Virus record (IMG/VR): IMGVR_UViG_3300009103_000001
Coordinates: 1-64,000 of that record
Direction: 5' to 3' (one strand)
Length of the DNA stretch: 64,000 nucleotides
Part shown: positions 10,072 to 62,861 of the stretch, in pieces
Numbering within the stretch: the first letter of the stretch is position 1
Layout of the letters: the number at the start of each line of letters is the position of its first letter
Translations under genes and position numbers: made by a program
The notes under the pieces: generated by a model
Database searches by the model: none
What the model was told of the DNA's origin: nothing
Seen by the model: the letters and a program-made list of their open reading frames with translations, nothing else

Positions 10072-10082
10072 AAATAAAAAAA

Positions 10083-10577: not shown

Positions 10578-10589
10578 AATTTTAGAACA

Positions 10590-10871: not shown

Positions 10872-10879
10872 TAAGAATA

Positions 10880-37885: not shown

Positions 37886-38818
37886 CTAGTTATCCAGCAA
37901 GGTGTCGTGGTGGTACTTGTCTATCTCATCTATTAACAAATAGTAACTAGGCGTTCTTTCTCTTATATCTTTTGATAAGTAATTATAGTTGAGTTTAACT
38001 TCATAAAAATCATCTATTATATTCATTACCGTCGCTTCTTGGTAACCAGAAATTCGTCCCATTTTTACGTAATCTACAGTATTTACATAATAATGATAAC
38101 CATTTATTGGCTCTATAGTATCACCTATATTGTATCTATATGGGTTGACATCCTTAACCCAATCTAAGTCAGATTCATTTATTTTATTGGGTTTTATATC
38201 ACTCCAATATATTACTTCTATGTTTTCTTCAATAGAATTTTCAATATCATCATCTGATAATTTTTTTTCTGTGTCTTTATAAAAAGTTAACAGTCCCCTC
38301 ATTGCCCCCAGAAAATGATGTATACTATTTATTTTATATGGTAATATTTTTTGTCCACCACTGTTCCAATTATACCCTAAATTAAATAATGTTTTTTGTA
38401 TTTCTTCACTTTCTTTTGAACTTGATGGGTCTATGTCATTAACTAAAACCCATTCAGTATCCATATTTAAAGCGGTGTTTGTGTCCTCAATCCATTTCAT
38501 ATCATTGGATTCATTCACATCTTTAGGGTATTGTAAATGGTCTGGTGTGGGTACTGAGTTTGGTGGTGCTGTTTCTCCTGTGCATAATTTTAATTTGCCT
38601 TCTTTATTTTGAATATAAAGAGCTGTTAAATCCCAAATTTGTCCATGGCCTTTTTTACTTCTAACAATTACTGTGTTTCTCGGTACATCTATATGTTCAA
38701 TAGTCCAATCAACTCCCTTACTGCTTTTAATACAAGAGCCGGCAATAATAGTACTGGGGACTTCTTTAGCCCAACTAAAATCTTTTATTGATTCTCTTAT
38801 AATTCTTTTTATATTCAC
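37886..38818 (-). CDS. Leader-family modular protein, 3 modules
   Basis: GTG 38818 after minus-strand GATATTTATT; NIKRIIRESIKDFSWAKE; VNESNDMKWIED; INESDLDWVKD. Confidence 0.8.
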   Translation of the reverse strand: MNIKRIIRESIKDFSWAKEVPSTIIAGSCIKSSKGVDWTIEHIDVPRNTVIVRSKKGHGQIWDLTALYIQNKEGKLKLCTGETAPPNSVPTPDHLQYPKDVNESNDMKWIEDTNTALNMDTEWVLVNDIDPSSSKESEEIQKTLFNLGYNWNSGGQKILPYKINSIHHFLGAMRGLLTFYKDTEKKLSDDDIENSIEENIEVIYWSDIKPNKINESDLDWVKDVNPYRYNIGDTIEPINGYHYYVNTVDYVKMGRISGYQEATVMNIIDDFYEVKLNYNYLSKDIRERTPSYYLLIDEIDKYHHDTLLDN

Positions 38819-38924
38819 AATTTTATTATTATAATAATAAATATCATTAAAACATGTAATAATAAACACCACTATATCTTAACATAACAAACACTTTTTA
38901 TACGGTAAAGATATTTATGAATAT

Positions 38925-41177
38925 ATGAATATTAAAAGACATATAAAAGAAGAAATTAATAAATCTGAAAGTGACTTTGATTGGGTATCTGACCAGGACC
39001 CAAACAATATTCATATAAGAAATTTAGAAAAAGGGATGGAAGTAATGGTTAGTTGTCGTTCTTCTAATGGTCGTGAGAAATTCCCTTCAGTATTGAATAG
39101 AAAACTTACAGTAGATTATATATATGATGATTATAGAGAAGGGTCAATCTGTGTTCACTTTAATGATATGGGTGGTATAAAATATCCTTTTGGTTATAAC
39201 CGTGAACCATTAATACCTGGGTTAAGTATATGTGAAAGTTTGGGGTGTAATTTTAAACTTATTAAATATATCGATGAATCTGATACTAGTAATAAATCAA
39301 AAGACATGCAGTGGGTTAAAGATGTTAAACCAATTAAAATAGGTGATTGTTTAAGAGGACGTTTTTATCGGGAGATTCTCCCATATCAAAACACATATAT
39401 TGTAACAGACATTCTGTTTTCAGTAATACAGTTAAAGATTATACCAAATGCATATCATAATGCTACAATTACAAAACCAATAACTGAAGTTATAAACGCA
39501 ATAGAAAAGGGTTATATGGTGGTATGTGATTGTCTTGAAGATTGTCATGAAAATATAAATGAATCAGAATCTAATATGGATTGGATTAAAGATGTTCCAG
39601 ATAAATTACCTTTAATTCATGATAGGACTAAAATTGGTTTAAAAGATTTTTTAATGGATTTTATGGAGGATAAATCATCTGGAGTATTGGAGGGATTATA
39701 TGATTCAGAACAATATAAACCAACAGATGAATATTTTGATAATATAGAAGCTGAATATGGTCCAGCTCATTGGGAAAATGAAGGGTTAGGTGATTGGGTA
39801 GATTATGATTGGAAAGAACATGGTTATTGGACAAATCATGATGGTACTCCATGGGTTGGTAATTTCGATTTGTTAGAAGAATTAGAAATGGGTTGTGATT
39901 CATGGGAATTTATTGAACGCAAAACAGATGATTATGATTTAGAGTACGGTGGTTGGAATGATTCATTTATATTTAAAAGAAAACGAGACGGTAGATATTT
40001 TTCTTTAATGGTGGGAGGTAGTTATCAAGATGGGATAGAAGACCATTGGGATTTTTTATATGAAGTTTTTCCCCAAATGAAATTAGTTTATGAATCTGAT
40101 AATATAAAAAAAGTAATAAGGAAAGAAATAAATGAATCTGATTTTGAATGGATAGACCATGATAGTCCTTTGGATGATATTAGTTTTAAAACACAATGGA
40201 AAGGAATACACACTCCAGTTTTTACTATTAAAGATAATGGAGACCCTAATTGGGTGTCAATTACTTGGATTAATTCTAGTGGGGTAAAACAAGAGTCAAC
40301 TTATGTACGAAATACTGTTAATAAATTTTTTAGAGAAGGTACATGGATACCTATAAATAACACCCGTTATAATTCTATCACAATAAAAGAATCTAAGGGT
40401 TTAGATTGGATGAATAATTTCCAATGGACTGCTGACATGTTATTATCTATGTTAGAAAATTGTAATGAGATTAAAGTTAGTAATTATAATTTAAAAAATG
40501 ATAAACCTTATACGATAAGAGGTAAAAATTTTCCTATTTATACATTAACTAGATGTGAAGAATGGTGGGATAAGTTTTCCCAAATACCATTAGATAAGAA
40601 TAATCGTGGTCCAGCTGAGTGGTATGATGATTATGATGAGGGTAGGATAGGTTTAATATCTACTTATGGACCTAAATATAAAAATATTAGGGATATTAAT
40701 TTGGAAGACATTGACCAGCGTTGGGGTTGGACTATTTCCCAAACACCACAACAAATAGTTAATTCCTTAAATGGTAAAGGTGGTGAACTTTATATTTTAT
40801 TAGATGAAAATCATAGACCTATTTATGACTTAATCCCTAAAGAATATAGAGAAAAAATTAAATCAAAATGGGAAGATTATTTTTATGATGAAAATTTAAA
40901 AAATACTATAAAAGAAGAAATTAAAAGACCATCAGAAAAAGAATTCAAACAGGCGTTAAAAGACATTCTTACCTTAATCCCTTCTTTATCTCACCAAAGA
41001 ATACATGATGAAGGTTTGGAACATGATAGTGAAACAATGATAAGATTAAATAAAGAAATCTTAGAAAAGGTGAAAGAAGGTGATGATGAGGTTTTGGACG
41101 AATTATGGGAAATATCGGGCACTTTGATAATGAAAAACGCAATTAATATAATTACTTTTTATACAAAATGGATTTAA
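38925..41177 (+). CDS. Leader-family modular protein, about 6 modules
   Basis: MNIKRHIKEE...DFDW; linkers IDES..MQWVKD, INES..MDWIKD, INESDFEW, IKESKGLDW. Confidence 0.8.
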   Translation: MNIKRHIKEEINKSESDFDWVSDQDPNNIHIRNLEKGMEVMVSCRSSNGREKFPSVLNRKLTVDYIYDDYREGSICVHFNDMGGIKYPFGYNREPLIPGLSICESLGCNFKLIKYIDESDTSNKSKDMQWVKDVKPIKIGDCLRGRFYREILPYQNTYIVTDILFSVIQLKIIPNAYHNATITKPITEVINAIEKGYMVVCDCLEDCHENINESESNMDWIKDVPDKLPLIHDRTKIGLKDFLMDFMEDKSSGVLEGLYDSEQYKPTDEYFDNIEAEYGPAHWENEGLGDWVDYDWKEHGYWTNHDGTPWVGNFDLLEELEMGCDSWEFIERKTDDYDLEYGGWNDSFIFKRKRDGRYFSLMVGGSYQDGIEDHWDFLYEVFPQMKLVYESDNIKKVIRKEINESDFEWIDHDSPLDDISFKTQWKGIHTPVFTIKDNGDPNWVSITWINSSGVKQESTYVRNTVNKFFREGTWIPINNTRYNSITIKESKGLDWMNNFQWTADMLLSMLENCNEIKVSNYNLKNDKPYTIRGKNFPIYTLTRCEEWWDKFSQIPLDKNNRGPAEWYDDYDEGRIGLISTYGPKYKNIRDINLEDIDQRWGWTISQTPQQIVNSLNGKGGELYILLDENHRPIYDLIPKEYREKIKSKWEDYFYDENLKNTIKEEIKRPSEKEFKQALKDILTLIPSLSHQRIHDEGLEHDSETMIRLNKEILEKVKEGDDEVLDELWEISGTLIMKNAINIITFYTKWI

Positions 41178-41485
41178 GAAAAATTATAAGAGAAGAAGTG
41201 GATAAATTGGGTTGGATTAAAGACCAAGACCCATTATTTGTGGGTTCTTGTATAACAAAACATTTGCATAAATTACATCCAGAAACACATGGCCCAAATA
41301 GTGAAATATATAAAGAATTTGGACCAACAGATTTAGATTATATAATTGTTGGTGAGAGGGATAATGAAATAATTATTAGACCCAAACCTTTTGACCCAAA
41401 CGATGAAAGACTTTATCTTAGTATCAATAAAAAAGAATTAAGCAATAACATCATTAATAAAAAAATAAGTTTTTGTGAATATTAG
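41168..41485 (+). CDS. Leader-family protein
   Basis: MDLRKIIREEVDKLGWIKD. Confidence 0.78.
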   Translation: MDLRKIIREEVDKLGWIKDQDPLFVGSCITKHLHKLHPETHGPNSEIYKEFGPTDLDYIIVGERDNEIIIRPKPFDPNDERLYLSINKKELSNNIINKKISFCEY

Positions 41486-42167
41486 AAAAATCATACGAGA
41501 AGAACTAGATAATATTAAATGGGTTCAAGACCATGGAGATTATTCAGATGCTTTTATTATAAAACCATACCAGCAATCTGCTTTTGGTGGGGATTTATAT
41601 GTAGTATTAGGTTACAATGATAAAGGAATTAGACTTATGAAAGCTGGTGGAATAAGGAGAAATATATATAACCAACCATATGCTCATTTTATTTTTAATA
41701 CCAAAAATGAAGGTGTTGTAATTATAAGAGATTTTCAATGGGAACAATATAGAAAACTTAATGAAGAAGAAAAGGAATTGGTAAATGATGCCATAAAAAG
41801 TAACAAACATCAAGATTATCTTAATATATTAACAAGTGACACAAATTTATATGAGTCAGAAGACCCATTAAAATGGATAAAAGATGTTAAAACAAATGAT
41901 GATATTGCACAAGAGATTTATGATGAGTTGGAATGGGATGCTCTTCACAAGAGACCTCATATCGTTAGAAATCAATGGAATGACATACCTTTCTCAGTTA
42001 GACCATCTCAAAAAAAAGAATCAGCAATTATAATTCCTAGTGTTTTTTATAAAGGGTATAGAGATTATATGAGGAAAAAATGGGGAATTTATGACCCAGA
42101 TATTCAAAAAGAAATTTATTTTAAAATAAGATATTTAATGTATCAAAAAGTAAAAACATATAATTAG
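41475..42167 (+). CDS. Leader-family protein, 2 modules
   Basis: MNIRKIIREELDNIKW; LYESEDPLKWIKD. Confidence 0.78.
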   Translation: MNIRKIIREELDNIKWVQDHGDYSDAFIIKPYQQSAFGGDLYVVLGYNDKGIRLMKAGGIRRNIYNQPYAHFIFNTKNEGVVIIRDFQWEQYRKLNEEEKELVNDAIKSNKHQDYLNILTSDTNLYESEDPLKWIKDVKTNDDIAQEIYDELEWDALHKRPHIVRNQWNDIPFSVRPSQKKESAIIIPSVFYKGYRDYMRKKWGIYDPDIQKEIYFKIRYLMYQKVKTYN

Positions 42168-42172
42168 ATATT

Positions 42173-42988
42173 ATGGATATAAAAAGAATCATAAAAGAAG
42201 AAATTGATGACTTTAATTGGATTAAAGAATCTGACCCCATAGAACAATTAGATAATCATTATGGTAATATATTTAATCATCTCCCAAGACAAGAAAATAT
42301 TCCTGAAACAGATTATTATAAAGATGCTATTACACTACATGAACTTTTAAATCAATTAGAAGGGGATTATGATGATTTGTTTAGTTCAACTCTAGCAGAT
42401 ATATGTACATGGGGATTACCAATTCCAAGTCATGAAAAATATAGTTCAGTACCAATAATAAAAAAAATACTTTGTCATGATGATTTTAAGAAACCTGAAA
42501 TTAAAAAGTTATTAAAGGGATATTATAAAAAAAGAATAAAACAACTTAAAAAGTTGTTAGGACAACCATCAAGTACATGGGAAACTATTAAAAGATATAA
42601 TCCTTTTTATTCAAGGATATCTGACGCAATTAGAACCACCAATCAAAATGTAAATGAATCCGATGATTTTGGTTGGGTTGATAACTCTATTGAGGTAGGT
42701 AAATGTTTCATGGTAAACTATCCCATTCCATCGTACTATACTATGGAGGATATTAATCTATTGTTTCAGATGATTAAAATAATTGACATAAAACAAGGTA
42801 AAGAACTTAAGGGTGTTGGTGGAAGAAAATTAATGGATATTCCAAAAGATTCATTTAATGAAAGAGCAGTTAAAATAAAATTCGCTAAAATGAATTATGG
42901 TTCTTGGAGAGATGACTTTGAAATATATTACCCTGAAGTTCAAGACTGGATTGATTGGGGATGGTTAACACCTGTAGAATGTGAATAA
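42173..42988 (+). CDS. Leader-family protein, 2 modules
   Basis: MDIKRIIKEEIDDFNWIKE; VNESDDFGW. Confidence 0.78.
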   Translation: MDIKRIIKEEIDDFNWIKESDPIEQLDNHYGNIFNHLPRQENIPETDYYKDAITLHELLNQLEGDYDDLFSSTLADICTWGLPIPSHEKYSSVPIIKKILCHDDFKKPEIKKLLKGYYKKRIKQLKKLLGQPSSTWETIKRYNPFYSRISDAIRTTNQNVNESDDFGWVDNSIEVGKCFMVNYPIPSYYTMEDINLLFQMIKIIDIKQGKELKGVGGRKLMDIPKDSFNERAVKIKFAKMNYGSWRDDFEIYYPEVQDWIDWGWLTPVECE

Positions 42989-44039
42989 AAACAAGATGTC
43001 AAAGAACTTAAGAAATATAATAAGGGAAGAAATCAAGGATATACAATGGATTAAAGATACTAATCCACTTAAAGAGGGATATTACTATATTGATGCTGAT
43101 GGTTTATCTCGTGAAGAAAGATTAGATTTACAACAAAAAATATTAGACTTAGGTTTTCGTTGGGATGAACGTTACAATATTCCCCATTATACAAGTGATA
43201 ACCTCAACCATATAGCTTTAAATACATTACGAGGTTATGTTTTAAATGGTGTAGACAATAGAATAACCTATACTGTATTGGCTTATCCTCAGTACGCTAA
43301 AAATTGGTTAACGTATTTATCATATAATAATTTTATTAAATTATATAACCAAAATATTAATGAGAATGATGGTAAGGAATGGATAAAAGATGATTTCGAT
43401 TGGGCTGAAAATCCCATAGAAGTGGGCAATTGTTTTACCCTTAAATTCATAACTCACGGTAACCCTATTTTTGTTATAGATAGAATAGAAGAAGATGGTA
43501 GTGATTTAGATTTGTTTGAGGAACGTGTTGTTGTATATTTTAAAATGATAAATTCTTTCACATCCCTAGGTGGGACACAACAGGTCAACAACTATATGGA
43601 TTACACAGGTCCTGCAAGGATTGAACCATTTGAAGCCTCATTTAAACGAGTTGGTGAATTGATTGATAGGGGTATTTTAATACCTGTAGATTGTGGGAAT
43701 AATCTTAATGAATCAAGTGAGTTGGAATGGATTAAAGATGTTAAAATAAGATTGGGAGATGCATGGAAGGCTGGTTTAATTAATGATGGAGATATTTTAA
43801 CTTTATCTGGAGAACTTGCGGATAGTGACGATTTAAGAAGGATAATGGTAACCGATTTTAGAATAAAAATAATTGAAGTTAAAAACAAATTTACTGACTC
43901 TTACTTCGTACCATTAGATGAAAAATACTATGAATATATTGGATACGATAATGAAGAAGTGAGGTTTTATATAACTGATAAAAAATTAGAAATTGTTGAC
44001 CATATCAAAGTACATGATAATTTAAACATTTATGAATAA
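42981..44039 (+). CDS. Leader-family protein, 3 modules
   Basis: MSKNLRNIIREEIKDIQWIKD; INENDGKEWIKD; LNESSELEWIKD. Confidence 0.78.
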   Translation: MNKNKMSKNLRNIIREEIKDIQWIKDTNPLKEGYYYIDADGLSREERLDLQQKILDLGFRWDERYNIPHYTSDNLNHIALNTLRGYVLNGVDNRITYTVLAYPQYAKNWLTYLSYNNFIKLYNQNINENDGKEWIKDDFDWAENPIEVGNCFTLKFITHGNPIFVIDRIEEDGSDLDLFEERVVVYFKMINSFTSLGGTQQVNNYMDYTGPARIEPFEASFKRVGELIDRGILIPVDCGNNLNESSELEWIKDVKIRLGDAWKAGLINDGDILTLSGELADSDDLRRIMVTDFRIKIIEVKNKFTDSYFVPLDEKYYEYIGYDNEEVRFYITDKKLEIVDHIKVHDNLNIYE

Positions 44040-44057
44040 TATTTATAGATAATTAAC

Positions 44058-45806
44058 ATGGATATTAAAAGAATCATAAAGGAAGAAATTAATGACTTCG
44101 ATTGGGCTGAAAACTTAATTAAGGTGGGTAATTGTTTTGCTATAAGGGACCGAAGGGGTGGTGAAATGTCTCTTAAAATAACTAAAATAATGATACATCC
44201 GGCTAAATCCTACCGTAATGAAGACCCCAATATAAAAGATAACTTCAAACATGATGATGTTATTGTAGTATTCAGTGGAAGCAAATCATCATTAGATTGG
44301 TTATCCTATACAGAAGTTGAAAGTTGGCTTAATAGAGGTGTTTTAATCCCTATTGATTGCGAACAACCAAATGATAAAGAATTTTCAATTATTGATGAAA
44401 ATGATGAGATGGAATGGATTAAAGAAAATCCAATAGAGGTGGGAAAATGTTTCTTAGTAAAAAGCTCAATAATTTTTGGTTGGAATGAGCGTAATGACTT
44501 TACAGTTAAAATAATTGATATAGAACAAGATGAAGGTAAATGGGTAGATATTCCAAAAGGTTCCTTTAATGAAGACACCATTAAAATAAAGTTCAATAAT
44601 TACCTTGAGTTATATTATTCTGATTTTCAAGAATGGCTTAATAATGGATGGTTGATACCCACTGATTGTGGAAATAGTATTAATGAATCTGATGACCTAC
44701 AATGGATTAAAGATATAAAACCATCCTTTTATACACTTGTAATAGATTTAGGGGAGAAGATATCTAGAGCTAAATATAGAAAAGTAATGTTGAAATTAGA
44801 TTCAATGGGTTATAAATGGTATCAATTAGCTATGAATGTGAGAGATAAATTATTAGTTAATAGATTTGGTCCAAAACCAATTATACATTTTTACCCTGGA
44901 TTTAGATATCTAATATTAGGCCCAACAGGAGAAATCCCAGAAAAAGAGATAAGTCATACCAACCTTATAAGAAAATATCCATCATTAGATGTAATCCCCG
45001 TTAATGATTTTCTTAGTCAACCCATAAATGAATCCAATGACCTACAATGGATAAAGGATGTAGAAACATCAAAGTTTAGACCAGAGGTGGGTGATTACAT
45101 AGAAGTAAGGAATAAAGGTAGTGAAGAAGCTTATCGTAATTGGTTGGGTTCAGATTTAAGTGAAGCTTATGATGATGGTATCTATGGTTATAACATACAA
45201 GGTGAAGTTATACCCGAAATTCAAAAAGCGATGAGAGGTAAAGGGTTTAATATAATAGAACATAATACGGATGATGTTATTTTTTTTCCTTATCATGAAT
45301 ATATGTTAGAATATGCTGATATCCATGTTGAATTTAAAGATTTAGATTTAGAATATTACCCCATTTCTTACTCTTCTAAGGATATTAATGAATCAGAAGA
45401 AATGGATGACTTTGGTTGGATTAAAGATTCTCAACCAATATCATACGATTTTCTTTTGGGTAAATCTTTATATTTTAACCCATCCATTAGTGACGCTGAA
45501 ACCAATGAATCAATAATGAAATTATTGGAAAGTATAGGTTTTAAACGCTGGGACAGGAACCCAAATACTAACGAAATAGATGATTGGGGTGGTCTATTTA
45601 AGGAAGAAGAAATTATTGGCTTATATTTTAGACCAAGTGATGGACAGGTAATGTTTACAACAGACGATGACTTAGACCCCCACCATGGTAGTGACTTTGA
45701 TGAATATGATTATGAAGAACATCTTCATGGCGCAGTGGAGGACATCAGTTGGATTGAGATTCTTGATGGTTGGCAAGTATTGGGACATTATTTAGGTACT
45801 GTATAA
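44058..45806 (+). CDS. Leader-family protein, 5 modules
   Basis: MDIKRIIKEEINDFDW; IDENDEMEW; INESDDLQW; INESNDLQW; INESEEMDDFGW. Confidence 0.8.
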   Translation: MDIKRIIKEEINDFDWAENLIKVGNCFAIRDRRGGEMSLKITKIMIHPAKSYRNEDPNIKDNFKHDDVIVVFSGSKSSLDWLSYTEVESWLNRGVLIPIDCEQPNDKEFSIIDENDEMEWIKENPIEVGKCFLVKSSIIFGWNERNDFTVKIIDIEQDEGKWVDIPKGSFNEDTIKIKFNNYLELYYSDFQEWLNNGWLIPTDCGNSINESDDLQWIKDIKPSFYTLVIDLGEKISRAKYRKVMLKLDSMGYKWYQLAMNVRDKLLVNRFGPKPIIHFYPGFRYLILGPTGEIPEKEISHTNLIRKYPSLDVIPVNDFLSQPINESNDLQWIKDVETSKFRPEVGDYIEVRNKGSEEAYRNWLGSDLSEAYDDGIYGYNIQGEVIPEIQKAMRGKGFNIIEHNTDDVIFFPYHEYMLEYADIHVEFKDLDLEYYPISYSSKDINESEEMDDFGWIKDSQPISYDFLLGKSLYFNPSISDAETNESIMKLLESIGFKRWDRNPNTNEIDDWGGLFKEEEIIGLYFRPSDGQVMFTTDDDLDPHHGSDFDEYDYEEHLHGAVEDISWIEILDGWQVLGHYLGTV

Positions 45807-45812
45807 ATCAGT

Positions 45813-45995
45813 TTAATCCCACATTCTGTAGGTTTTTGGAATCATATCTACCATAGTCATAATAGATTTTCTACTATGAGTAGATTCTAACTCATCATTA
45901 TTCTCTGTTATGATATTATGTTCTTTTAAGAAGAAGTACTGTCTATCAGATACTATAAAAACATCATTTTCTTTGGGTAGGTTAATTACTCTCAT
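45813..45995 (-). CDS. Small hypothetical protein
   Basis: Likely start MRVINL at junction-like AAAGATGAG (track 46037). Confidence 0.5.
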   Translation of the reverse strand: MRVINLPKENDVFIVSDRQYFFLKEHNIITENNDELESTHSRKSIMTMVDMIPKTYRMWD

Positions 45996-46167
45996 CTTTA
46001 TTAACTTCTTTAATCTCAAATACTTTACAATCTTCAATATTACAACACTCTAACATTTCTTCTTTCCATTTTAACATTTTATTTATGTTAGTTGAAATGT
46101 TGTACCCTACGGTAAAGTCATCATTTCTTTCACCATGAATCAACCCTATATATTGTTTCTTACTCAT
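45982..46167 (-). CDS. Small cassette-type protein
   Basis: MSKKQY... starts in a copy of the junction repeat at 46163-46184. Confidence 0.6.
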   Translation of the reverse strand: MSKKQYIGLIHGERNDDFTVGYNISTNINKMLKWKEEMLECCNIEDCKVFEIKEVNKDESN

Positions 46168-46180
46168 CTTTGTTTTGGTT

Positions 46181-46396
46181 TTAATCTCTAAATGTTGGTC
46201 CAGCAAATCCTGGTATATACATAACTCTCATTGTAGTTGTTTCTGCTTGTTCTTGAGTCATTCCTTTGTCAAGATATTTCTGTATTAGCTCTTCTTTCAT
46301 TTTTATACACTGTTTCGTCATTTCTCTATCTTCATCTGTAATACTCTCAACATATCTTTTGAAAAGTCCTTTCTTGGGTTTGAATTCTTTACTCAT
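46181..46396 (-). CDS. Small hypothetical protein
   Basis: ORF track; its stop is the TAA of the junction repeat. Confidence 0.6.
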   Translation of the reverse strand: MSKEFKPKKGLFKRYVESITDEDREMTKQCIKMKEELIQKYLDKGMTQEQAETTTMRVMYIPGFAGPTFRD

Positions 46397-46839
46397 CCTT
46401 TAATAAGTTTGGCAATCAATTTTGATTTTTCAATAGTACTCATATCATCGTTCTCCAATAATTTCAATGTCTTATACACTTTAAATTCATTTTCATCAAA
46501 TTCATTAATACCATTCTCTTCCATCCATTGTATTTTGAGTTTAACATCACCAAGCTCCAACTCCAATCTTTCTTTCTCTTCCGTTAAATCTTCTTTATTG
46601 GTGGCATTACAGAAACCAACCAATTCATGTGCATATACCCAACCAACACTTCTAGAATCAACACAAGACAATATATAATAAGCTTCATATTGTTGATGCT
46701 TGTAATCAACTTTCACACATGGCTCTCCCAAATACACTTCTTTACTCAAGTCACAAGAAGCACCATAAATAAACCCATGAGAACTCTGAGGCATTCCACA
46801 AGGCGCCACCTGCAATTTATAAGTTTTTGTTTTTCCCAT
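46393..46839 (-). CDS. Hypothetical protein
   Basis: Likely start MGKTKT (track 46893). Confidence 0.6.
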   Translation of the reverse strand: MGKTKTYKLQVAPCGMPQSSHGFIYGASCDLSKEVYLGEPCVKVDYKHQQYEAYYILSCVDSRSVGWVYAHELVGFCNATNKEDLTEEKERLELELGDVKLKIQWMEENGINEFDENEFKVYKTLKLLENDDMSTIEKSKLIAKLIKG

Positions 46840-46910
46840 TTTAATTTTTAATATTAGATTTTTAATTTTTTTCACTAAAACAACAATAATCATTATCTAC
46901 AAAAACGTCA

Positions 46911-46951
46911 AATAAAAAAAAGGGGGGTAGGGGGGATTTTTCTTAAGCCGC
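46911..46951 (-). repeat. About 40 bp G/C-run element, copy 1
   Basis: Reverse complement of 55302-55341 apart from homopolymer lengths. Confidence 0.75.
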
Positions 46952-47038
46952 AATTTTTTTACTAATCCACATATAAATTTAACCCTATTATGAATACTCA
47001 TAACAGGGGCTTTTCTTACAAGAACGATATTTATGATT

Positions 47039-47359
47039 ATGAAACTAAAAAGAATAATAAAAGAATCCATATTAGATAACTGGTTTAGAAAGAATACACT
47101 TAAAACCCTTATAAACAGAAGTGCTTATTCTTATAATATGCATGATGTTATAATTAAAAAAGGTGATGATATAATTATATGGTTAAAACCATTTCCCAAA
47201 AGCAGTTATAGTGAAGAAGACCAACAATATGTATTAAACACAGAAAATGAAACTTTATCAGTATATGGAAGAGGATTAAATAATGAACCTGATTCAATAT
47301 ATAATTTATCAGAAAAAGAATACCATGATATATTCAATAAAATATATCATTTAATATGA
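47039..47359 (+). CDS. Leader-family protein
   Basis: MKLKRIIKES after GATATTTATG. Confidence 0.75.
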   Translation: MKLKRIIKESILDNWFRKNTLKTLINRSAYSYNMHDVIIKKGDDIIIWLKPFPKSSYSEEDQQYVLNTENETLSVYGRGLNNEPDSIYNLSEKEYHDIFNKIYHLI

Positions 47360-47805
47360 ATATAAGAAGAATCATAAGGGAAGAAATGGATAACCATATA
47401 ACCAAAGTTATATTAGATACCATTAATGAATATGATATGGACCCTTATGATATTAATAATGATTTATGTGAAGATTTCACAATGGATGTAATTAATAAAA
47501 TGGGAGGATATAACGATAATTTATATGAATTATCTGATGATATGATTTCTAATTTTAGAGACCCAAAATATGCGTTAGATTACTGGGATGGAGAATTAAT
47601 AGAAACACCTTATGGCGTATGGAGCAAAAATGGGTTAGATAGATATGGATACCCTCCCATTCCTTTAAAAGATATTAAAGAAGAATTTAATCATGTATGG
47701 ATATATTACAATGGAAAACATTATGATGCAGAAGAACCTTATGGAGTTAATAACTGGACCGAATTGCCAATGATTAAAAGACAATTAAACTTATATAATA
47801 TATGA
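47356..47805 (+). CDS. Leader-family protein with papain/transglutaminase-like Cys-His-Asp motif
   Basis: INNDLCEDF...HVWIYYNGKHYDAE; paralog of 56979. Confidence 0.7.
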   Translation: MNIRRIIREEMDNHITKVILDTINEYDMDPYDINNDLCEDFTMDVINKMGGYNDNLYELSDDMISNFRDPKYALDYWDGELIETPYGVWSKNGLDRYGYPPIPLKDIKEEFNHVWIYYNGKHYDAEEPYGVNNWTELPMIKRQLNLYNI

Positions 47806-48806
47806 AATCAACAATAAGAAGAATCATAAGGGAAGAAATGGATGGTCTGGAATGGATTAAAAATGTTCAATCCAATCAGGACATTGCACAAGAGATTGCT
47901 GATGAAACAGAGGTAGATGATAATAAAAGAAAAATATATTTTCCCTTTTCCACCCCTTTCCCTCACTCTCTTTCTTTTTCTCTTCCTTTCTTTTCTTCAC
48001 ATTGTAAAAAAGTATATGGATTAAATGATGATGATATAAAAGATATATGGAAAAGATATAAGAAGATGGTTATGGATAAAATAAATGACCATAATAATCT
48101 TAATGAGAATGATGAATTAAAATGGATAAAAGATGTTCAATCCAATCAGGACATTGCACAGAAAATTGCTGATGAAACAATTATTGACTATGACTATAAA
48201 ATATATGCACCCTCCTTACCCAAATACCCTTTTCCACCTTTCCCACCAAATAAACCAATACGTTCCTTTCATGCTTATTGTGAAGAACAATATGGATTAA
48301 ATGATGATGATATAAAAGATGTATGGAATAGATATAAGAAACTTATTACAGATAAAATTAATGACTATAGGGAAAATTTATTCTCCACTAATGCTTTTAA
48401 TGAATCACCCAATATTAATGAATCCAATGACCTACAATGGATTAAGGATATTAGGTCAATTAAAATAGATGATTGTTTAAAGGTTAGTGGAAACTACACC
48501 TTTTCAAAGGATGATGAAGGAGAAATAACACATTGGCTACATCGTCCATGGACATATATTGTAAAAGATATTAAAAATAACAATTTAGGGGATTATTTAC
48601 TTTTAGAAATTATTTATACTGATTTACCAACTAACCGGAGAAGTACATATTTAATTACAAAATCATTAAAAGAAGTTATAGATGCTATAGAAAGAGGTTA
48701 TTTAAAATTTTGTGATAACCCTAAAAAACGAGATGAGTTTCAAGATGAAATAAATAGTGATTTATATCCTGGTAATATGGGAGATGAAATGTCTGCACCT
48801 AGATAA
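47802..48806 (+). CDS. Leader-family protein, 3 modules (first two duplicated)
   Basis: VQSNQDIAQ.IADET...YGLNDDDIKD.W.RYKK twice. Confidence 0.8.
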   Translation: MKSTIRRIIREEMDGLEWIKNVQSNQDIAQEIADETEVDDNKRKIYFPFSTPFPHSLSFSLPFFSSHCKKVYGLNDDDIKDIWKRYKKMVMDKINDHNNLNENDELKWIKDVQSNQDIAQKIADETIIDYDYKIYAPSLPKYPFPPFPPNKPIRSFHAYCEEQYGLNDDDIKDVWNRYKKLITDKINDYRENLFSTNAFNESPNINESNDLQWIKDIRSIKIDDCLKVSGNYTFSKDDEGEITHWLHRPWTYIVKDIKNNNLGDYLLLEIIYTDLPTNRRSTYLITKSLKEVIDAIERGYLKFCDNPKKRDEFQDEINSDLYPGNMGDEMSAPR

Positions 48807-48815
48807 TATAAAAAA

Positions 48816-49190
48816 ATGAATATAAGAAGAATCATAAGGGAAGAAATAAATGACTTTGATTGGGCTGAAAATCATATAGAGGTTGGGAAATGTTTCAAAA
48901 AACTTTCCAGCAACTACAGAAAAGAAGGGGGTTGGTTAATCGATGAACCTAATGAAAACTATACAGTTAAAATAATTGATATAAAACAAGGTAAAGAACT
49001 TCACAATAAAGGCAAATGGATAGATATCCCTAAAGGTTCATTTGATGAAAGAGCAGTTATAATAAAGTTCGCCAGACCTGAGATGAAGAGAACTGGATAT
49101 ACAAATTGGACAGGTGATATTGAGTTATATTACTCTAATGTTCAAGAATGGCTTAATGATGGGTGGTTAGTGCCTACAGAATGTGAATAA
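48816..49190 (+). CDS. Leader-family protein
   Basis: MNIRRIIREEINDFDWAEN; IEVGKCF module. Confidence 0.78.
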   Translation: MNIRRIIREEINDFDWAENHIEVGKCFKKLSSNYRKEGGWLIDEPNENYTVKIIDIKQGKELHNKGKWIDIPKGSFDERAVIIKFARPEMKRTGYTNWTGDIELYYSNVQEWLNDGWLVPTECE

Positions 49191-49770
49191 AAACAAGATG
49201 TCAAAGAACTTAAGAAATATAGTTAAAAGAATACTGAAAGAATCAGAATTAGATTGGTTCTCAGATATGAATATCGATAAGATAAAAGTGGGTGCTAAAT
49301 TTAACGTCAATGGCTCCTTTACAGGAACTTTTATAATTAATGAGATACTTTGGAATGAGAAGTTTCCTATGCATACTGAGGTTAACTATGAAGGTATTGA
49401 TTATAGTGGTTCCAAATTTAAGAATAGTGTTAGAATTAAAGATTTTTTAAGATGGTTAGACAATGGAATAATAGTACCCATAGAAAGAACACTAAAAGAA
49501 GCAGAATTCGATTGGTTCTCAGATATGAATATAGATAAGATAAAAGTTGGTGCTAAATTTAAATCTGTTAAACATTTGGATTTCCAAACAGGGGATGCAG
49601 GAACTTTTATAATTGATGAGATACTTTGGAATGAGAGGTCTCTTATGCATAGTGCAGTTAAGTATAGTGGTGTTGATTATAGAGGTTTCAAGTTTTTAGA
49701 TTGGGTCATAGTTAAAGATTTTTTAAGATGGTTGGATGATGGAACAATAGTACCTATAGAAGATAAATAG
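49183..49770 (+). CDS. Leader-family protein, 2 duplicated modules
   Basis: LKE(S/A)E.DWFSDMNIDKIKVGAKF twice. Confidence 0.78.
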   Translation: MNKNKMSKNLRNIVKRILKESELDWFSDMNIDKIKVGAKFNVNGSFTGTFIINEILWNEKFPMHTEVNYEGIDYSGSKFKNSVRIKDFLRWLDNGIIVPIERTLKEAEFDWFSDMNIDKIKVGAKFKSVKHLDFQTGDAGTFIIDEILWNERSLMHSAVKYSGVDYRGFKFLDWVIVKDFLRWLDDGTIVPIEDK

Positions 49771-50039
49771 AGACGTTCTACGGTCTTTAAATCAATTAAA
49801 TAATCCCCACTATCATTAGAACATTAAATGTCCTTAAAACCCAGGATTTACAAAACACTACTTTTTATATTATGTGGAAATCGTACATATGGGTAGTAAA
49901 CAAAACCATCGATTAAATGGAGTATTGTGGGATAAAGTGGTAAATTGTGTCCTTTTTACACCTCTTTCACACTGTGGGACCCGACCTTCCCTTAAATTGT
50001 TTGCAAAAATCTGGGGATTTTAGACAAAAAATCAAGGTC

Positions 50040-50109: not shown

Positions 50110-50121
50110 TTCAAGTTGGAC

Positions 50122-52036: not shown

Positions 52037-52702
52037 ATGCGTAAATCAATCAAAAAAATATTAAGTGAAAACGAATGGGAATGGGTTAATAAGATAGAAC
52101 CTAAACTAACTAAAGACCTAATCTTATGCTCTAACCATGAAAGGTTTAATCCAGGTTGTATGGAAATACTAAATGTATCGAATAGAATAGTATACACGAA
52201 ATCCTTAGAGACTGGTAACCGTTACGCAGACCCTATAGCAGATGTTATGAGGTGGTTAACTGATGGTGATTATCTACTAATGGATGGAACAGGAGAACTG
52301 GTAATACCATTAAAAGAATCAGATGATATGGACTGGATAAGAGATGTGGACCCAATGGTATCATTCGAAGACATTCATAAGGATAACTACCCACTTAGAA
52401 GAGATAGAACTTTTGACGGCTATGATTTAAAATTTGGTGTGAAGATTAAAAACTTGGATGCTATTATAGAAATGACAATGGATTGTAATGGTGATGAAGG
52501 AGAATGGATTGAGGATATTGCATGGTGTATAGTTGTGAATAGTAGCTACTTAAACCATCAAGATGTATACTGTGTTACCTCTCCAAAATATACATGGGAA
52601 GGACAAAGGGCTTGTTTGGATGTATACTTCTACGATAAAAATAATGTTAACATAGCCGACTACTGGGTATCAGATGATATGATTGAGTTATATTATCTGT
52701 GA
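52037..52702 (+). CDS. Leader-family protein, 2 modules
   Basis: MRKSIKKILSENEWEW; LKESDDMDWIRD. Confidence 0.75.
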   Translation: MRKSIKKILSENEWEWVNKIEPKLTKDLILCSNHERFNPGCMEILNVSNRIVYTKSLETGNRYADPIADVMRWLTDGDYLLMDGTGELVIPLKESDDMDWIRDVDPMVSFEDIHKDNYPLRRDRTFDGYDLKFGVKIKNLDAIIEMTMDCNGDEGEWIEDIAWCIVVNSSYLNHQDVYCVTSPKYTWEGQRACLDVYFYDKNNVNIADYWVSDDMIELYYL

Positions 52703-57853: not shown

Positions 57854-58144
57854 ATGAATATCAAGAAAATTATAAGGGAAGAAATCGATTTAAATTGGGT
57901 TAAAGATATCAGTCCTGATAATGCCACCATAAAGGATTTGGAAGTGGGAATGAATGTTATACCAAGCTGTAATAGTTTGGGTTTATTTGATATATCATAT
58001 GCTGTAGCTGAAATACATGAACATACTGAGGGAAACTATGATGAGGGTTCTTGTGTGTTATTATATCCCAACACTGAAAACACAGAGTATAATGTATTAT
58101 ATTTATGTGAACACTTAAACTGTAGTTTTAAAATATTAACCTAA
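57854..58144 (+). CDS. Leader-family protein
   Basis: MNIKKIIREEIDLNWVKD; module resembles the first module of 38925. Confidence 0.75.
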   Translation: MNIKKIIREEIDLNWVKDISPDNATIKDLEVGMNVIPSCNSLGLFDISYAVAEIHEHTEGNYDEGSCVLLYPNTENTEYNVLYLCEHLNCSFKILT

Positions 58145-61410: not shown

Positions 61411-61791
61411 ATGAACATAAAAAAGATAATAAAAGAAGAATTAGAATGGATTAAAAAAATCGAACCAAAATATATGCCAAAAAAAGATGAGTTGATTGAG
61501 GTTAGGTACGAAAATAAAGATTCTTTTTTACAATGGATTGGTTCATTTAAAACACCTTATTTAAGTGGTAAGTTTGGTAAATACATTAAAGGGCGTGTTG
61601 TAGACATATCTGATAATTTCTTCTTATTAGTGGTAAAAGATACAACTGGAAATCATGGAATATATTTCCCAACAATAACCGATAACATTGAATGGACAAA
61701 ACCATATTGGCCAACTAGTGGGGTAGGTGGACCACCTAAAGGTATATATGTTGAAGATATTGGTCTTAGATATGTACCACTATCGTCTTAG
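61411..61791 (+). CDS. Leader-family protein
   Basis: MNIKKIIKEELEWIKK; module resembles the fourth module of 44058. Confidence 0.75.
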   Translation: MNIKKIIKEELEWIKKIEPKYMPKKDELIEVRYENKDSFLQWIGSFKTPYLSGKFGKYIKGRVVDISDNFFLLVVKDTTGNHGIYFPTITDNIEWTKPYWPTSGVGGPPKGIYVEDIGLRYVPLSS

Positions 61792-62258
61792 TACCGTGTG
61801 TATCTAGGGAACCTATGTTTTAATATTCTACCCCTAGGTTTTAACTTACCATTTAAAGTATTAAATCTGTACATACTATAATTTACTCTTGTTACCCTAG
61901 TTATTGGGGGCAGTAGTGGTTGTGTAACTTCAGTTGGTGTATATCTATCTATAATAATAGTATATTGTCTTTCATGTTTTTTTCGTAAAATATCTAATTT
62001 AAGTTGTTTTTTAGCTCTAAGAATAGTTAACCTAGATGGCCTTTTATTTATATTTCTTTTCCTAAAACAAGCGAAAGGGTAATTAGATATCCAAATCGTA
62101 GTATCACCTAATTTTGCGGTATGTTCACCAATATTACTAAAGGTATATTCATCTAATAACACATTAAATTCATCATCCCAATCTTTATCATATGGGTCAT
62201 TCATTAACCAAAAATTAGGTCTGAATATAAATTGTAAGTTTCTAAAAAAATCTTTCAT
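61788..62258 (-). CDS. Hypothetical protein
   Basis: ORF track; C-terminal LKPRG...KH. Confidence 0.6.
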   Translation of the reverse strand: MKDFFRNLQFIFRPNFWLMNDPYDKDWDDEFNVLLDEYTFSNIGEHTAKLGDTTIWISNYPFACFRKRNINKRPSRLTILRAKKQLKLDILRKKHERQYTIIIDRYTPTEVTQPLLPPITRVTRVNYSMYRFNTLNGKLKPRGRILKHRFPRYTRY

Positions 62259-62312
62259 AATTATTAATTATAATAAAATATTTTTAAATCGTAAAGATAT
62301 TTATATATAACT

Positions 62313-62861
62313 ATGGATATAAGAAAAATCATAAAAGAGGAAATGGAATCTAAAAATATAGGATATGAAGATATTGTATATGAAGATGATAACCTAATAG
62401 TTATATATCCAAAAACAAGGGAAGCTTCATGTAATTATGGTGAAGACACAAATTGGTGTACAGCAGCTGAAGGTGGACAATCTTTCCATGAATATAATGA
62501 TAAAGGTAACTTATATTATCATATATGGAAATTTAAAATGCCTAATAATAAACAAAACTATCAAAAAATTGCTAGATTCATTGAATATGGTAAAGAATAT
62601 GGTGAACTTGGTGATTTTTTCTTATTTGATGATAGTCAAGTGGATAAGTATGAAATATTATTTAATATTTTAAATGGTAAAAAATTAAAGGAGGGTGGTT
62701 TTGAGTATCCAGCAGAGTTAAAACCATTAAATGATTCTTGGGAAAAAGCTTTTATTGCTGTTGATACACATTATGCAAAAAATGGTTTACACAAAACACC
62801 AACATATACGGAACCCGATATAGAAGATTTATGGGATGACGATTATGAAGAATTTTTCTAG
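62313..62861 (+). CDS. Leader-family protein with C-x-YG-x2-T-x-WC domain
   Basis: MDIRKIIKEE; PKTREASCNYGEDTNWCTAA. Confidence 0.75.
   Translation: MDIRKIIKEEMESKNIGYEDIVYEDDNLIVIYPKTREASCNYGEDTNWCTAAEGGQSFHEYNDKGNLYYHIWKFKMPNNKQNYQKIARFIEYGKEYGELGDFFLFDDSQVDKYEILFNILNGKKLKEGGFEYPAELKPLNDSWEKAFIAVDTHYAKNGLHKTPTYTEPDIEDLWDDDYEEFF

What the first reader, a model, noticed from the sequence alone, without database searches (positions are those of the whole stretch)
37886..49770. Polyprotein-like concatemers: modules joined by I/L-N/K-E-S-x-D-(F/L/M)-x-W-(I/V)-K-D linkers
About 20 internal linkers repeat the end of the N-terminal leader, e.g. INESDDLQWIKD, INESNDLQWIKD, VNESDDFGWVD, LNESSELEWIKD, LKEAEFDWFSD, INESDLDWVKD. 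They split proteins into 1-6 modules of roughly 70-170 aa (seen). Each module, first or internal, would begin with the same acidic D-F/L-x-W motif after cleavage at the Glu. I infer a head-protease-processed polyprotein system: one targeting leader packages several small effectors, and the retained D-x-W motif docks them on a common partner. I know no description of this architecture in phages.
Basis: partly seen in the sequence, partly recalled or inferred. Interest (0 to 1): 0.9.

Follow-up and report, generated by a model that had tools for sequence, protein, structure and literature searches.

The report
Phage cargo polyproteins with cleavable linkers
An uncultured T4-like jumbo phage encodes dozens of small unknown protein modules that each begin with, or are strung together by, one conserved 12-residue motif resembling the cutting site of the phage's own head protease; the strings are therefore probably loaded into the virus head and cut into separate pieces, though nobody has shown this at the bench.

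Summary
In 37886-49770, ten proteins carry an N-terminal leader (M-x-I-[RK]-[RK]-I-I-[RK]-E-E-x-x-D-F-x-W-[IV]-K-D). Seventeen to eighteen internal linkers ([LI]-N-E-S-x-D-[FLM]-x-W-[IV]-K-D) join 1-6 unrelated modules. The family extends outside the given coordinates: at least 36 leader-bearing genes in the first 120 kb of the source contig.

The window is the first 64 kb of a 210-kb T4-like phage contig. I walked that contig and found a gp21-type prohead protease (Peptidase_S77), a T4-type portal and a gp23-type capsid protein.
- The capsid protein's predicted maturation site is L-I-N-E|T, the same I-N-E tripeptide as the linkers.
- Small proteins encoded between the protease and capsid genes carry the same KKIIKE[DE] leader.
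- Cargo operons and structural genes share an upstream GATATTTAT motif.
- AlphaFold2 places the linkers outside the module folds.

All of this is circumstantial; there are no proteomics. The concept is not new: T4 capsid-targeting sequences, giant-phage ejection proteins cut at several sites, and "polyvalent proteins" are all described. The new part is a conserved linker that concatenates many small cargo modules. It is confined to a narrow metagenomic subclade. I rate it a new variant of a known kind, interest about 0.65.

The parts
37886..38818 (-). Cargo polyprotein, 310 aa from the corrected start at 38818. Leader motif at 38762-38797; internal linkers at 38483-38518 (VNESNDMKWIED) and 38150-38185 (KINESDLDWVKD). 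Three modules.
38925..41177 (+). Cargo polyprotein, 750 aa. Leader at 38958-38993. Linkers at 39288-39323, 39558-39593, 40125-40160 (preceded by a complete internal leader, KKVIRKEINESDFEW) and a weak one at 40383-40418. Five to six modules.
41168..41485 (+). Single-module leader protein, 105 aa; leader motif at 41189-41224.
41475..42167 (+). Two-module protein, 230 aa. Leader at 41496-41531; linker at 41850-41885 (YESEDPLKWIKD). The second module is homologous to modules 1 and 2 of the protein at 47802.
42173..42988 (+). Two-module protein, 271 aa. Leader at 42194-42229; linker at 42650-42685 (VNESDDFGWVDN). The C-terminal module belongs to family A.
42996..44039 (+). Three-module protein, 347 aa from MSKNLRN. 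Leader at 43023-43058; doubled linker at 43356-43412; linker at 43704-43739 (LNESSELEWIKD). The middle module belongs to family A.
44058..45806 (+). Five-module protein, 582 aa. Leader at 44079-44114; linkers at 44391-44426, 44679-44714, 45024-45059 and 45393-45428. Modules 1 and 2 belong to family A.
47033..47359 (+). Protein of 108 aa with the basic leader only (MIMKLKRIIKES...) and no W motif. First gene of an operon headed by GATATTTAT at 47026-47034.
47356..47805 (+). Protein of 149 aa with the leader (MNIRRIIREE) but no D-F-x-W. Its body is paralogous to the leaderless ORF at 56979-57272 (-).
   Evidence: read directly from the two translations
47802..48806 (+). Three-module protein, 334 aa. 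Leader at 47829-47864; linkers at 48099-48134 (LNENDELKWIKD) and 48414-48449 (INESNDLQWIKD).
48816..49190 (+). Stand-alone leader plus family-A module, 124 aa. AlphaFold2 model: leader is helix 3-13; the module is a small beta-rich domain with a C-terminal helix.
49198..49770 (+). Two tandem A-like modules, 190 aa. Leader at 49231-49266 (ILKESELDWFSD); linker at 49489-49524 (TLKEAEFDWFSD).
7543..11862 (+). A second operon of leader-bearing small proteins outside the finding (8187, 8961, 9391, 9736, 10590, 10880, 11218), headed by GATATTTAT at 7530-7538.
12055..15009 (+). Protein of 984 aa with GP88 and L5-gp82 domains. A 99-aa extra module is joined to its C-terminus by a linker at 14686-14721 (KENKSDFDWVDD).
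52037..52702 (+). Two-module leader protein, 221 aa, with an internal linker at 52310-52345 (LKESDDMDWIRD).
57854..58144 (+). Single-module leader protein, 96 aa. Its module is homologous to module 1 of the protein at 38925.
61411..62861 (+). Two further leader proteins: 61411-61791, whose module resembles module 4 of the protein at 44058, and 62313-62861. They are separated by a minus-strand ORF, and each is preceded by GATATTTAT.
38837..38918 (.). Divergent intergenic region carrying GATATTTAT on both strands (38837-38845 on the minus strand, 38910-38918 on the plus strand), 6-18 nt before the two start codons. The same motif precedes the gp13, TerL, portal, protease and head-core genes further along the contig.

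Best explanation
These genes encode capsid cargo of a T4-like jumbo phage.

Proposed mechanism:
1. The N-terminal basic amphipathic helix (M-x-I-[RK]-[RK]-I-I-[RK]-E) works like a T4 capsid-targeting sequence. It brings the whole polypeptide into the scaffolding core of the prohead.
2. The block shared by leaders and internal linkers ([LI]-x-E followed by [SE]-x-D-[FLM]-x-W-[IV]-K-D) is a processing site for the phage's gp21-type prohead protease, which cuts after the Glu.
3. One targeting leader can therefore load a string of 2-7 unrelated small modules. These are then released as separate proteins inside the head and delivered with the DNA.

Shown: the motif, the modular shuffling, the T4-type head gene set, the matching capsid-protein site, the leader on head-cluster proteins, and the flexible linkers.
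Inferred: packaging, cleavage, delivery, and any role of the D-F-x-W part. That part could be an exosite for the protease or a tag kept by the mature modules.
For: 1. The motif is real and under protein-level selection.
2. [LIVM]-x-E with its Glu 4-8 residues before the W occurs in 53 of 62 unique internal linkers and 40 of 41 leaders, against 10% of random positions.
3. The basic helix is found only at N-termini, apart from a few evident recent fusions. The [LI]-x-E plus D-F-x-W block is found at N-termini and between modules. This is what one targeting signal plus many cleavage sites predicts.
4. The source contig encodes Peptidase_S77 (88.5 bits; 35% identical to T4 gp21), a T4-type portal, gp13, TerL and a gp23-type capsid protein.
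5. The capsid protein has L-I-N-E|T at residues 57-61. In the alignment with T4 gp23, T4's known site L-T-E65|A lies about 10 residues upstream of the aligned segment that in this protein directly follows I-N-E. [LI]-[NT]-E is kept at this spot in all 49 extracted relatives, while the residues after it vary. INE occurs only 1.04 times per 1000 aa in this proteome.
6. Five ORFs between the protease and capsid genes, where T4 has its core proteins, start with MKKIIKLNENDIENLVKKIIKE[DE] or MGLIRKIIKEELL. Two D-F-D-W leader genes follow the capsid gene. The closest relative, L040, has the same arrangement.
7. GATATTTAT lies 4-20 nt before the starts of gp13, TerL, portal, protease and a head-core gene, and also before the cargo operons. 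The window has 14 copies against 4.3 expected, reached by 0 of 100 shuffles.
8. AlphaFold2 gives family-A modules pLDDT 70-89, while the leader (1-17) and linkers (103-128, 207 onward) fall below 50. In the single-module model the leader is a detached helix.
9. The same module occurs stand-alone, first, internal or last in different proteins and phages, so each module is an independent unit.
10. Literature: the T4 targeting sequence is the first 10 residues, with residues 8 and 10 governing processing. T4 internal proteins are diverse and share only this sequence. gp21 also cuts core proteins at many sites (PMC9026906, PMC3012670, PMC5694885).
Against: - There is no virion proteome, N-terminal sequence or expression data; every link to the capsid is by analogy and position.
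- The modules are acidic (median pI 4.9; 26 of 32 below 6). T4 internal proteins are described as basic (PMC9026906).
- About 36 leader genes in 120 kb is a lot of cargo. They include an ECF-type sigma factor and a 984-aa protein, which could equally act in the cytoplasm.
- The most conserved residues (D-F-x-W-I-K-D) lie after the proposed cut, and a simple [LI]-x-E protease site does not explain them.
- [LI]-x-E is common in this Ile/Glu-rich proteome (14.5 per 1000 aa), so the capsid-protein coincidence is only moderately significant.
- In type-1 leaders (IIREE) the cut would fall one residue out of register with the linkers, with Glu at P1'.
- GATATTTAT also precedes genes with no known structural role, for example the operon that contains DnaK.
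Confidence: 0.5

Rival explanations
1. Docking peptide without proteolysis. The leader or linker is a short linear motif that binds one common partner, such as a phage or host protein, or a phage chaperone like the encoded DnaK or Clp-type ATPase. Multi-module proteins stay intact. Internal copies exist because genes that each had the leader became fused.
For: - Complete leaders are found inside some proteins (window 40107 region; P0010, P0012), which shows a gene-fusion origin.
- The best-conserved residues are the acidic-aromatic D-F-x-W-I-K-D, typical of a binding peptide.
- The phage encodes DnaK and a ClpB/ClpC-like ATPase.
- The modules are acidic, like many cytoplasmic early phage proteins.
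Against: - Internal linkers have their own consensus, distinct from the leader (N at -7, S at -5, no basic helix). This consensus is conserved across divergent contigs, so they are not simply decaying leaders.
- The [LI]-x-E triad is as conserved as the aromatic part.
- This reading does not explain the leader on head-cluster proteins or the identical tripeptide at the capsid-protein maturation site.
Confidence: 0.25
2. Recombination joints. The conserved linker is mainly a stretch of shared sequence that lets homologous recombination shuffle modules between genes, with no function in the protein itself.
For: - Modules are clearly shuffled.
- Three linkers (44679, 45024, 48414) share nearly identical DNA.
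- P0036 looks like a deletion between a module start and the next linker.
Against: - Across all copies the codons at conserved residues vary synonymously, roughly as in the genome at large, while the amino acids stay fixed.
- The motif is conserved at protein level in distant contigs with different DNA.
- A 36-nt joint with that much synonymous variation is a poor recombination substrate.
- Shuffling is better seen as a consequence of the shared linker than as its purpose.
Confidence: 0.07
3. Structural element. The leader or linker is the first helix or strand of each module's fold, so these are ordinary repeat proteins.
For: The W is invariant in all 17 aligned family-A modules. AlphaFold2 draws short helices over the motif.
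Against: - The same motif precedes at least 20 unrelated module types.
- In both AlphaFold2 models the motif residues have low confidence, and in the secondary-structure readout the leader is a separate helix ahead of the module's strands; contacts were not inspected.
- The family-A module ends cleanly at ...P-x-x-C-E, followed by a stop codon, when it comes last.
Confidence: 0.05
4. Processing by a different protease. The linkers are cleavage sites, but for a host protease or another phage protease acting in the cytoplasm, so the modules are released in the infected cell rather than in the head.
For: - The extended D-F-x-W motif is not needed by T4-type gp21.
- Some modules and relatives carry a Cys...His pattern that might be a small papain-like domain (47356, 56979, the C-terminal part of P0025; read directly).
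- The polyvalent-protein precedent uses embedded peptidases (PMC5512222).
Against: - No peptidase family other than S77 was detected. Pfam gives only a sub-threshold Peptidase_C97 hit (E = 0.066).
- The match to the capsid-protein site and the leaders on head-cluster proteins point to the prohead protease.
Confidence: 0.08

Closest known systems
T4 capsid-targeting sequences on internal proteins (IPI-III, Alt) processed by the gp21 prohead protease
   Same: - T4-type head gene set with an S77 protease.
- A short N-terminal leader (about 9-10 residues up to the Glu) shared by otherwise unrelated, fast-evolving proteins.
- [LI]-x-E at the end of the leader.
- Precedent for gp21 cutting some substrates at many sites (PMC9026906, PMC3012670, PMC5694885).
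   Different: - The leader continues into a conserved D-F-x-W-[IV]-K-D that would stay on the product.
- The site is repeated internally, so one polypeptide carries up to 7 modules.
- There are dozens of members rather than a handful.
- The modules are acidic rather than basic.
- There is no sequence similarity to T4 internal proteins: tblastn against phage isolates found nothing.
Polyvalent proteins of phages and conjugative elements (Iyer et al. 2017, PMC5512222)
   Same: - Two to 15 unrelated domains in one phage polypeptide.
- Predicted to be packaged and delivered with the DNA, then split into functional units by proteolysis.
- Explicitly compared by the authors to viral polyproteins.
   Different: - Polyvalent proteins are defined by a known repertoire of large enzymatic domains and usually an embedded zincin-like peptidase.
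- Here no Pfam domain is found in any module.
- The modules are 50-250 aa, and cleavage would be in trans by the head protease at a conserved linker, a feature not described for polyvalent proteins.
Inner-body and ejection proteins of phiKZ, 201phi2-1 and SPN3US, processed by the gp175/gp245 proteases
   Same: Many paralogous head-internal proteins, cleaved after Glu at short motifs, sometimes at several sites. Conserved N-termini on diverged paralogs were noted for SPN3US gp53 and gp54 (PMC5694885, PMC9026906).
   Different: - The motif there is [SAG]-x-E and the propeptides are long (over 100 aa).
- Those phages are chimalliviruses with a different head architecture.
- There is no repeated inter-module linker.
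Polyproteins of eukaryotic RNA viruses, and Kex2-processed repeat proteins of fungi (analogy only; from my own knowledge)
   Same: Several functional units are translated as one chain and released at conserved junction motifs by a dedicated protease.
   Different: Unrelated proteases, motifs and biology. No capsid-targeting step.

Membership tests
T4-type capsid-targeted (CTS) head-internal proteins | The phage has the T4-type prohead machinery: gp21/S77 protease, gp20 portal, gp23 capsid protein and a scaffold. | tested here: met
   Peptidase_S77 at 88.5 bits and Portal_T4 at 250 bits. Gp23 and gp13 families appear in the gene tables. 35% identity to T4 gp21. An acidic 401-aa scaffold-like protein lies just before the capsid gene.
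T4-type capsid-targeted (CTS) head-internal proteins | A short N-terminal propeptide, shared by otherwise unrelated proteins, ending in a gp21-type [LI]-x-E site. | tested here: met
   40 of 41 leaders have [LIVM]-x-E, with I-[RK]-E at residues 7-9. The bodies of these proteins are unrelated.
T4-type capsid-targeted (CTS) head-internal proteins | The protein is physically present in the head and its propeptide is removed by the prohead protease. | not testable with these tools
   The phage is uncultured and no proteome exists. Only indirect support.
T4-type capsid-targeted (CTS) head-internal proteins | Small basic proteins, as described for the T-even internal proteins. | tested here: not met
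   Median module pI is 4.9 and only 1 of 32 modules is above pI 8. This describes IPI-III rather than defining targeting as such; Alt is a large enzyme.
Polyvalent proteins (PMC5512222) | Two or more unrelated domains in one polypeptide, encoded by a phage with a portal-terminase packaging system. | tested here: met
   Up to 5-6 modules in the window and 7 in P0035. Portal and TerL are present.
Polyvalent proteins (PMC5512222) | Contains the characteristic domain repertoire (zincin-like peptidase, ADP-ribosyltransferase, helicase, methylase, ParB-like domains and so on). | tested here: not met
   No Pfam or PHROG family reaches threshold in any module. Foldseek on family A found nothing at E < 0.001.
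phiKZ/SPN3US-type processed ejection proteins | [SAG]-x-E cleavage motif and a chimallivirus head gene set. | tested here: not met
   The linker P3 residue is L/I/V/M, not S/A/G. The head genes are T4-type.

The most novel reading that the evidence does not exclude
A narrow lineage of T4-like jumbo phages has turned the T4 capsid-targeting principle into a general multi-cargo loading system:
- One N-terminal address loads strings of up to seven unrelated small acidic effectors, and possibly an ECF sigma factor, into the prohead.
- The head protease releases the modules at a dedicated 12-residue linker.
- Each released module keeps an N-terminal [SE]-x-D-F-x-W tag that serves a second, post-cleavage function, such as retention on the core or DNA, ordered ejection, or docking on a host target.
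- The shared linker doubles as a recombination joint that speeds up cargo shuffling.
Probability: 0.2. Interest if true: 0.8.

Novelty: new variant of a known kind. Interest (0 to 1): 0.65.

Why it matters
If the mechanism holds, virion cargo could be predicted from sequence alone in an abundant but uncultured T4-like clade. It would flag about 60 unknown small modules as candidate injected effectors, whether anti-defence or host-takeover proteins.

It would also provide a compact natural design for loading several proteins into a capsid from one gene: an address, cleavable linkers and the payloads. That is relevant to engineering T4-type capsids as protein carriers.

Finally, it would show how a head protease's specificity can be co-opted to evolve a polyprotein strategy in a DNA phage. 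The concept has so far been argued mainly for large polyvalent proteins with embedded peptidases.

Tried and rejected
- Megablast of 20 kb against phage isolates: no match.
- tblastn of the 582-aa and 124-aa proteins against phage isolates: no match, even at E = 1.
- Pfam and PHROGs on all proteins of the cluster and on ten further leader proteins: nothing above threshold.
- Foldseek of the family-A model against PDB and BFVD: no hit at E < 0.001, only weak resemblances to small beta-barrels (SH3/Tudor-like).
- Full-length AlphaFold2 of the 582-aa protein: only the two family-A modules folded confidently, so modules 3-5 remain unmodelled.
- tRNA scan and Rfam scan of the window: nothing.
- T4 late-promoter consensus TATAAATA: not enriched on the sense strand (16 copies against 39 on the antisense strand). 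The recurring upstream element is GATATTTAT instead.
- Motif scan of 80 capsid-gene neighbourhoods (925 kb) from the wider clade: the W motif turned up only in the closest relative (L040). The system is therefore not a general trait of the clade. The HMM run returned nothing because of its thresholds, so I used the regex.
- Repeat-fold reading and pure DNA-joint reading: rejected as primary explanations (see rival explanations).
- Resemblance between the leader and the capsid propeptide segment A-I-R-E-x5-W: too weak to use. The I-R-E is not conserved in relatives.

Full report
**What the window is.**
The 64-kb window is the first 64 kb of IMG/VR contig IMGVR_UViG_3300009103_000001 (210,157 bp). 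Loci fetched from that contig overlap the window with zero mismatches. G+C is about 28%.

No isolate phage shares DNA with it. Context genes include a DnaK whose best matches are huge uncultured phages, a thymidylate-synthase-like protein (read from the translation), and a MAM-domain protein with a type-IX-secretion sorting domain, which hints at a Bacteroidota host. The closest isolate by capsid protein is Flavobacterium phage vB_FspM_immuto, at 41% over the C-terminal 40%.

**Checking the observation.**
A loose regular expression centred on the Trp gives 33 six-frame matches in the window, against a mean of 0.83 in shuffles.

Within 37886-49770 there are ten N-terminal leaders that contain the motif and 17-18 internal linkers. 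These cut the proteins into 1-6 modules of 47-256 aa.

All-against-all BLAST puts the modules into at least six families plus many singletons, and the families are shuffled among the proteins. Family A, for example, occurs alone (48816), first and second (44058), in the middle (42996) and last (42173).

Corrections to the coordinates are listed under the observation check. Most importantly, the family extends well outside the finding. There are 25 leader-bearing ORFs in the window and at least 11 more up to 120 kb of the contig.

**Anatomy of the motif.**
I collected 103 unique instances from the contig, other IMG/VR loci and metagenomic proteins: 41 leaders and 62 internal linkers.

- Internal consensus: [LI]-N-E-S-[DN]-D-[FLM]-[DE]-W-I-K-D-[VI]-x-P. 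Trp is invariant, Glu at -6 occurs in 50 of 62, and Asp or Glu at -3 in 54 of 62.
- Leader consensus: M-x-[IL]-[KR]-[KR]-I-I-[KR]-E-E-[IM]-[DN]-D-F-D-W-[IV]-K-[DE]. A second type reads ...K-I-L-K-E-S-D-F-D-W.

The basic helix is therefore specific to N-termini. The block from [LI]-x-E to W-I-K-D is common to both contexts.

[LIVM]-x-E, with its Glu 4-8 residues before the Trp, is present in 53 of 62 linkers and 40 of 41 leaders, against 10% of random positions in this proteome.

Codons at the conserved residues vary synonymously, roughly as in the genome overall, so selection acts on the peptide. Three linkers nevertheless share nearly identical DNA, which suggests recent exchange.

Some proteins contain a complete leader internally (window 40107 region; P0010, P0012). 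This shows that concatemers arise by fusion of leader-bearing genes.

**Distribution.**
- A strict DNA pattern for the leader finds 18 stretches in 2.9 million IMG/VR contigs.
- A pattern for the internal linker finds 12.
- A profile of linker plus family A finds only 27 proteins among 1.84 billion representatives, all with the same leaders and linkers. One of them, P0035, comes from a hydrothermal-vent metagenome and has seven modules and six linkers.

Other contigs, including one of 380 kb, also have internal linkers. The capsid protein itself belongs to a large clade: at least 598 matching stretches in IMG/VR. In 80 capsid neighbourhoods of that clade, however, the W motif appears only in the closest relative. 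The system is thus a recent invention of a narrow subclade.

**The rest of the contig.**
Walking with exact-protein look-ups showed a T4-type morphogenesis region:
- gp13 (contig 77489);
- TerL (95595);
- a T4-type portal (97698; 250 bits);
- a Peptidase_S77 prohead protease (104290; 88.5 bits; 35% identical to T4 gp21);
- an acidic scaffold-like protein (108824);
- a gp23-type capsid protein (110065).

Three observations tie the leader and linker to this machinery.

First, the capsid protein reads ...E-N-Q-A-S-T-L-I-N-E|T-T-D-T-A-G-G.... In the alignment with T4 gp23, the known T4 site L-T-E65|A lies about 10 residues upstream of the segment that aligns with the residues directly following I-N-E here, so the two sites occupy approximately the same place. 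In all 49 relatives whose N-terminus could be extracted, [LI]-[NT]-E is kept at exactly this place, while the following residues vary. This is the behaviour expected of a cleavage site. The tripeptide is the same as in the linkers; INE occurs only 1.04 times per 1000 residues.

Second, five ORFs between the protease and capsid genes, where T4 has its core proteins, begin with MKKIIKLNENDIENLVKKIIKE[DE] or MGLIRKIIKEELL. Two D-F-D-W leader genes and another KLNEND-type gene follow the capsid gene. The closest relative, L040, has the same arrangement, whereas more distant relatives have a compact protease-scaffold-capsid block.

Third, GATATTTAT lies 4-20 nt upstream of the start codons of gp13, TerL, portal, protease and a head-core gene. 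It also lies upstream of the cargo operons at 7543, 38818(-), 38925, 44058, 47033, 52037, 57854, 61411, 62313, 65727, 89764(-), 112369 and 115360. The window has 14 copies against 4.3 expected, a count reached by 0 of 100 shuffles. This fits co-regulation but does not prove late timing, because some genes of unknown or non-structural role have the motif too.

**Structure.**
AlphaFold2 on the 582-aa protein was poor overall (mean pLDDT 54). It folded both family-A modules at pLDDT 70-89 and left the leader (1-17) and the linkers (103-128, 207 onward) below 50.

The 124-aa single-module protein, run with a 17-sequence alignment, gave pLDDT 75 and pTM 0.66. It shows a detached N-terminal helix (residues 3-13), the D-F-D-W segment in coil, and a small beta-rich domain with a C-terminal helix.

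Foldseek found no significant match in PDB or BFVD. What the modules do remains unknown.

**Mechanism.**
The best reading is an elaboration of T4 biology. In T4 the first 10 residues of an internal protein target it to the scaffolding core. Residues 8 and 10 govern removal by gp21. The internal proteins of T-even phages are diverse and share only this sequence (PMC9026906, PMC3012670). gp21 also cuts core proteins at many sites (PMC5694885).

Here the N-terminal-only basic helix would be the address. The shared [LI]-x-E block would be the cut site, repeated between modules. One address would then load several payloads, which are released inside the head.

I put this at about 0.5. Weak points:
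- There are no protein data.
- The modules are acidic (median pI 4.9), unlike T4's basic internal proteins.
- The number of putative cargo species is large and includes an ECF sigma factor.
- The strongly conserved D-F-x-W-I-K-D lies after the cut and is unexplained.

That segment could be an exosite for the protease, a tag kept by the products, or the real functional core of a non-proteolytic docking motif (rival, about 0.25). Other rivals are a different protease (0.08), DNA-level recombination joints (0.07) and a structural element (0.05).

**Comparison with what is known.**
The system works like T4 capsid targeting and meets its sequence-level criteria. Packaging and processing could not be tested.

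It resembles the 'polyvalent proteins' of Iyer et al. (PMC5512222) in logic: many domains in one chain, predicted packaging, and proteolytic release. It lacks their domain repertoire and their embedded peptidase.

It differs from phiKZ- and SPN3US-type processing in both motif and head type.

I found no description of a conserved, repeated inter-module linker combined with a targeting-type leader. This rests on only two literature searches. I rate it a new variant of a known kind.

Noticed in passing
L029:15862-16401 (+) = contig 84511-85050: An ECF-type sigma factor (Sigma70_r2 plus r4_2) starts with the same basic leader (MEKLIKKILKEELLKE), ahead of the sigma domain that begins near residue 30. 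If the leader is a capsid address, this phage might package a sigma factor.
   Followed up: partly
window 21510-23366 (+) and L029:17080-19557 (-): The phage encodes both a full-length DnaK (Hsp70) and an 825-aa ClpB/ClpC-like double-AAA+ protein with a Clp_N domain, in effect a chaperone/disaggregase pair. The DnaK operon is headed by the GATATTTAT motif at 19540.
   Followed up: partly
window 7530, 19540, 31589, 38837(-), 38910, 47026, 57841, 61398, 62296, 63360; also contig 77466, 95575, 97676, 112348, 115334: The recurrent upstream element [AT]-[AG]-GATATTTAT-[AT] lies 4-20 nt before start codons of structural genes and cargo operons. It is probably this lineage's promoter, perhaps a late promoter giving very short leaders. 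It is the reverse complement of the T4 late consensus TATAAATA, but read on the sense strand.
   Followed up: partly
window 12055-15009 (+): A 984-aa protein combines the mycobacteriophage domains GP88 and L5-gp82, neither with a known function. It has a leader-like N-terminus and a 99-aa extra module attached by a canonical linker at 14686-14721.
   Followed up: partly
window 47356-47805 (+) and 56979-57272 (-): These two paralogs share a Cys...His-x-W-V-Y-Y-N-G-K-H-Y-D pattern, and the C-terminal half of P0012-14 and P0025 has a comparable pattern. It may be a small papain- or transglutaminase-like domain. One copy has the leader and the other does not. Pfam gave only a sub-threshold Peptidase_C97 hit (E = 0.066).
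   Followed up: no
window 2967-5465 (+) and 6049-6960 (-): The first is a phage-encoded 832-aa protein with two MAM domains and a type-IX-secretion C-terminal sorting domain. The second is a lipoprotein-like protein (MKKIFIILLSVLTIVSC...). Both point to a Bacteroidota host and to phage proteins exported by host machinery.
   Followed up: no
window 46922-46935: The tract GGGGGGTAGGGGGG, flanked by A and T runs, lies in the intergenic region between the minus-strand ORFs and the 47033 operon. It is conspicuous in a 28% G+C genome and may be a terminator or G-quadruplex element.
   Followed up: no
window about 49771-50120 and 52700-53110: Two stretches richer in G+C, without convincing ORFs, flank the cargo clusters. 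Rfam gathering-threshold and tRNA scans found nothing there.
   Followed up: partly
L026:12879-13283, L029:4912-5724, L034:11706-12836, L029:167-724: The contig also encodes a SET-domain protein, a sulfotransferase, a glutamine-synthetase-like protein and a CAP-domain protein (Pfam labels taken from the gene tables). These are unusual auxiliary genes for a T4-like phage.
   Followed up: no
L056:8906, L087:8890 and 9396, L043:8838, L041:10585: In more distant relatives that lack the W motif, a gene downstream of the capsid gene (in most cases the next one) still starts with a basic amphipathic N-terminus, for example MNRLRQIIKEQLLLE. An older, simpler form of the leader may therefore be widespread in this clade.
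   Followed up: no
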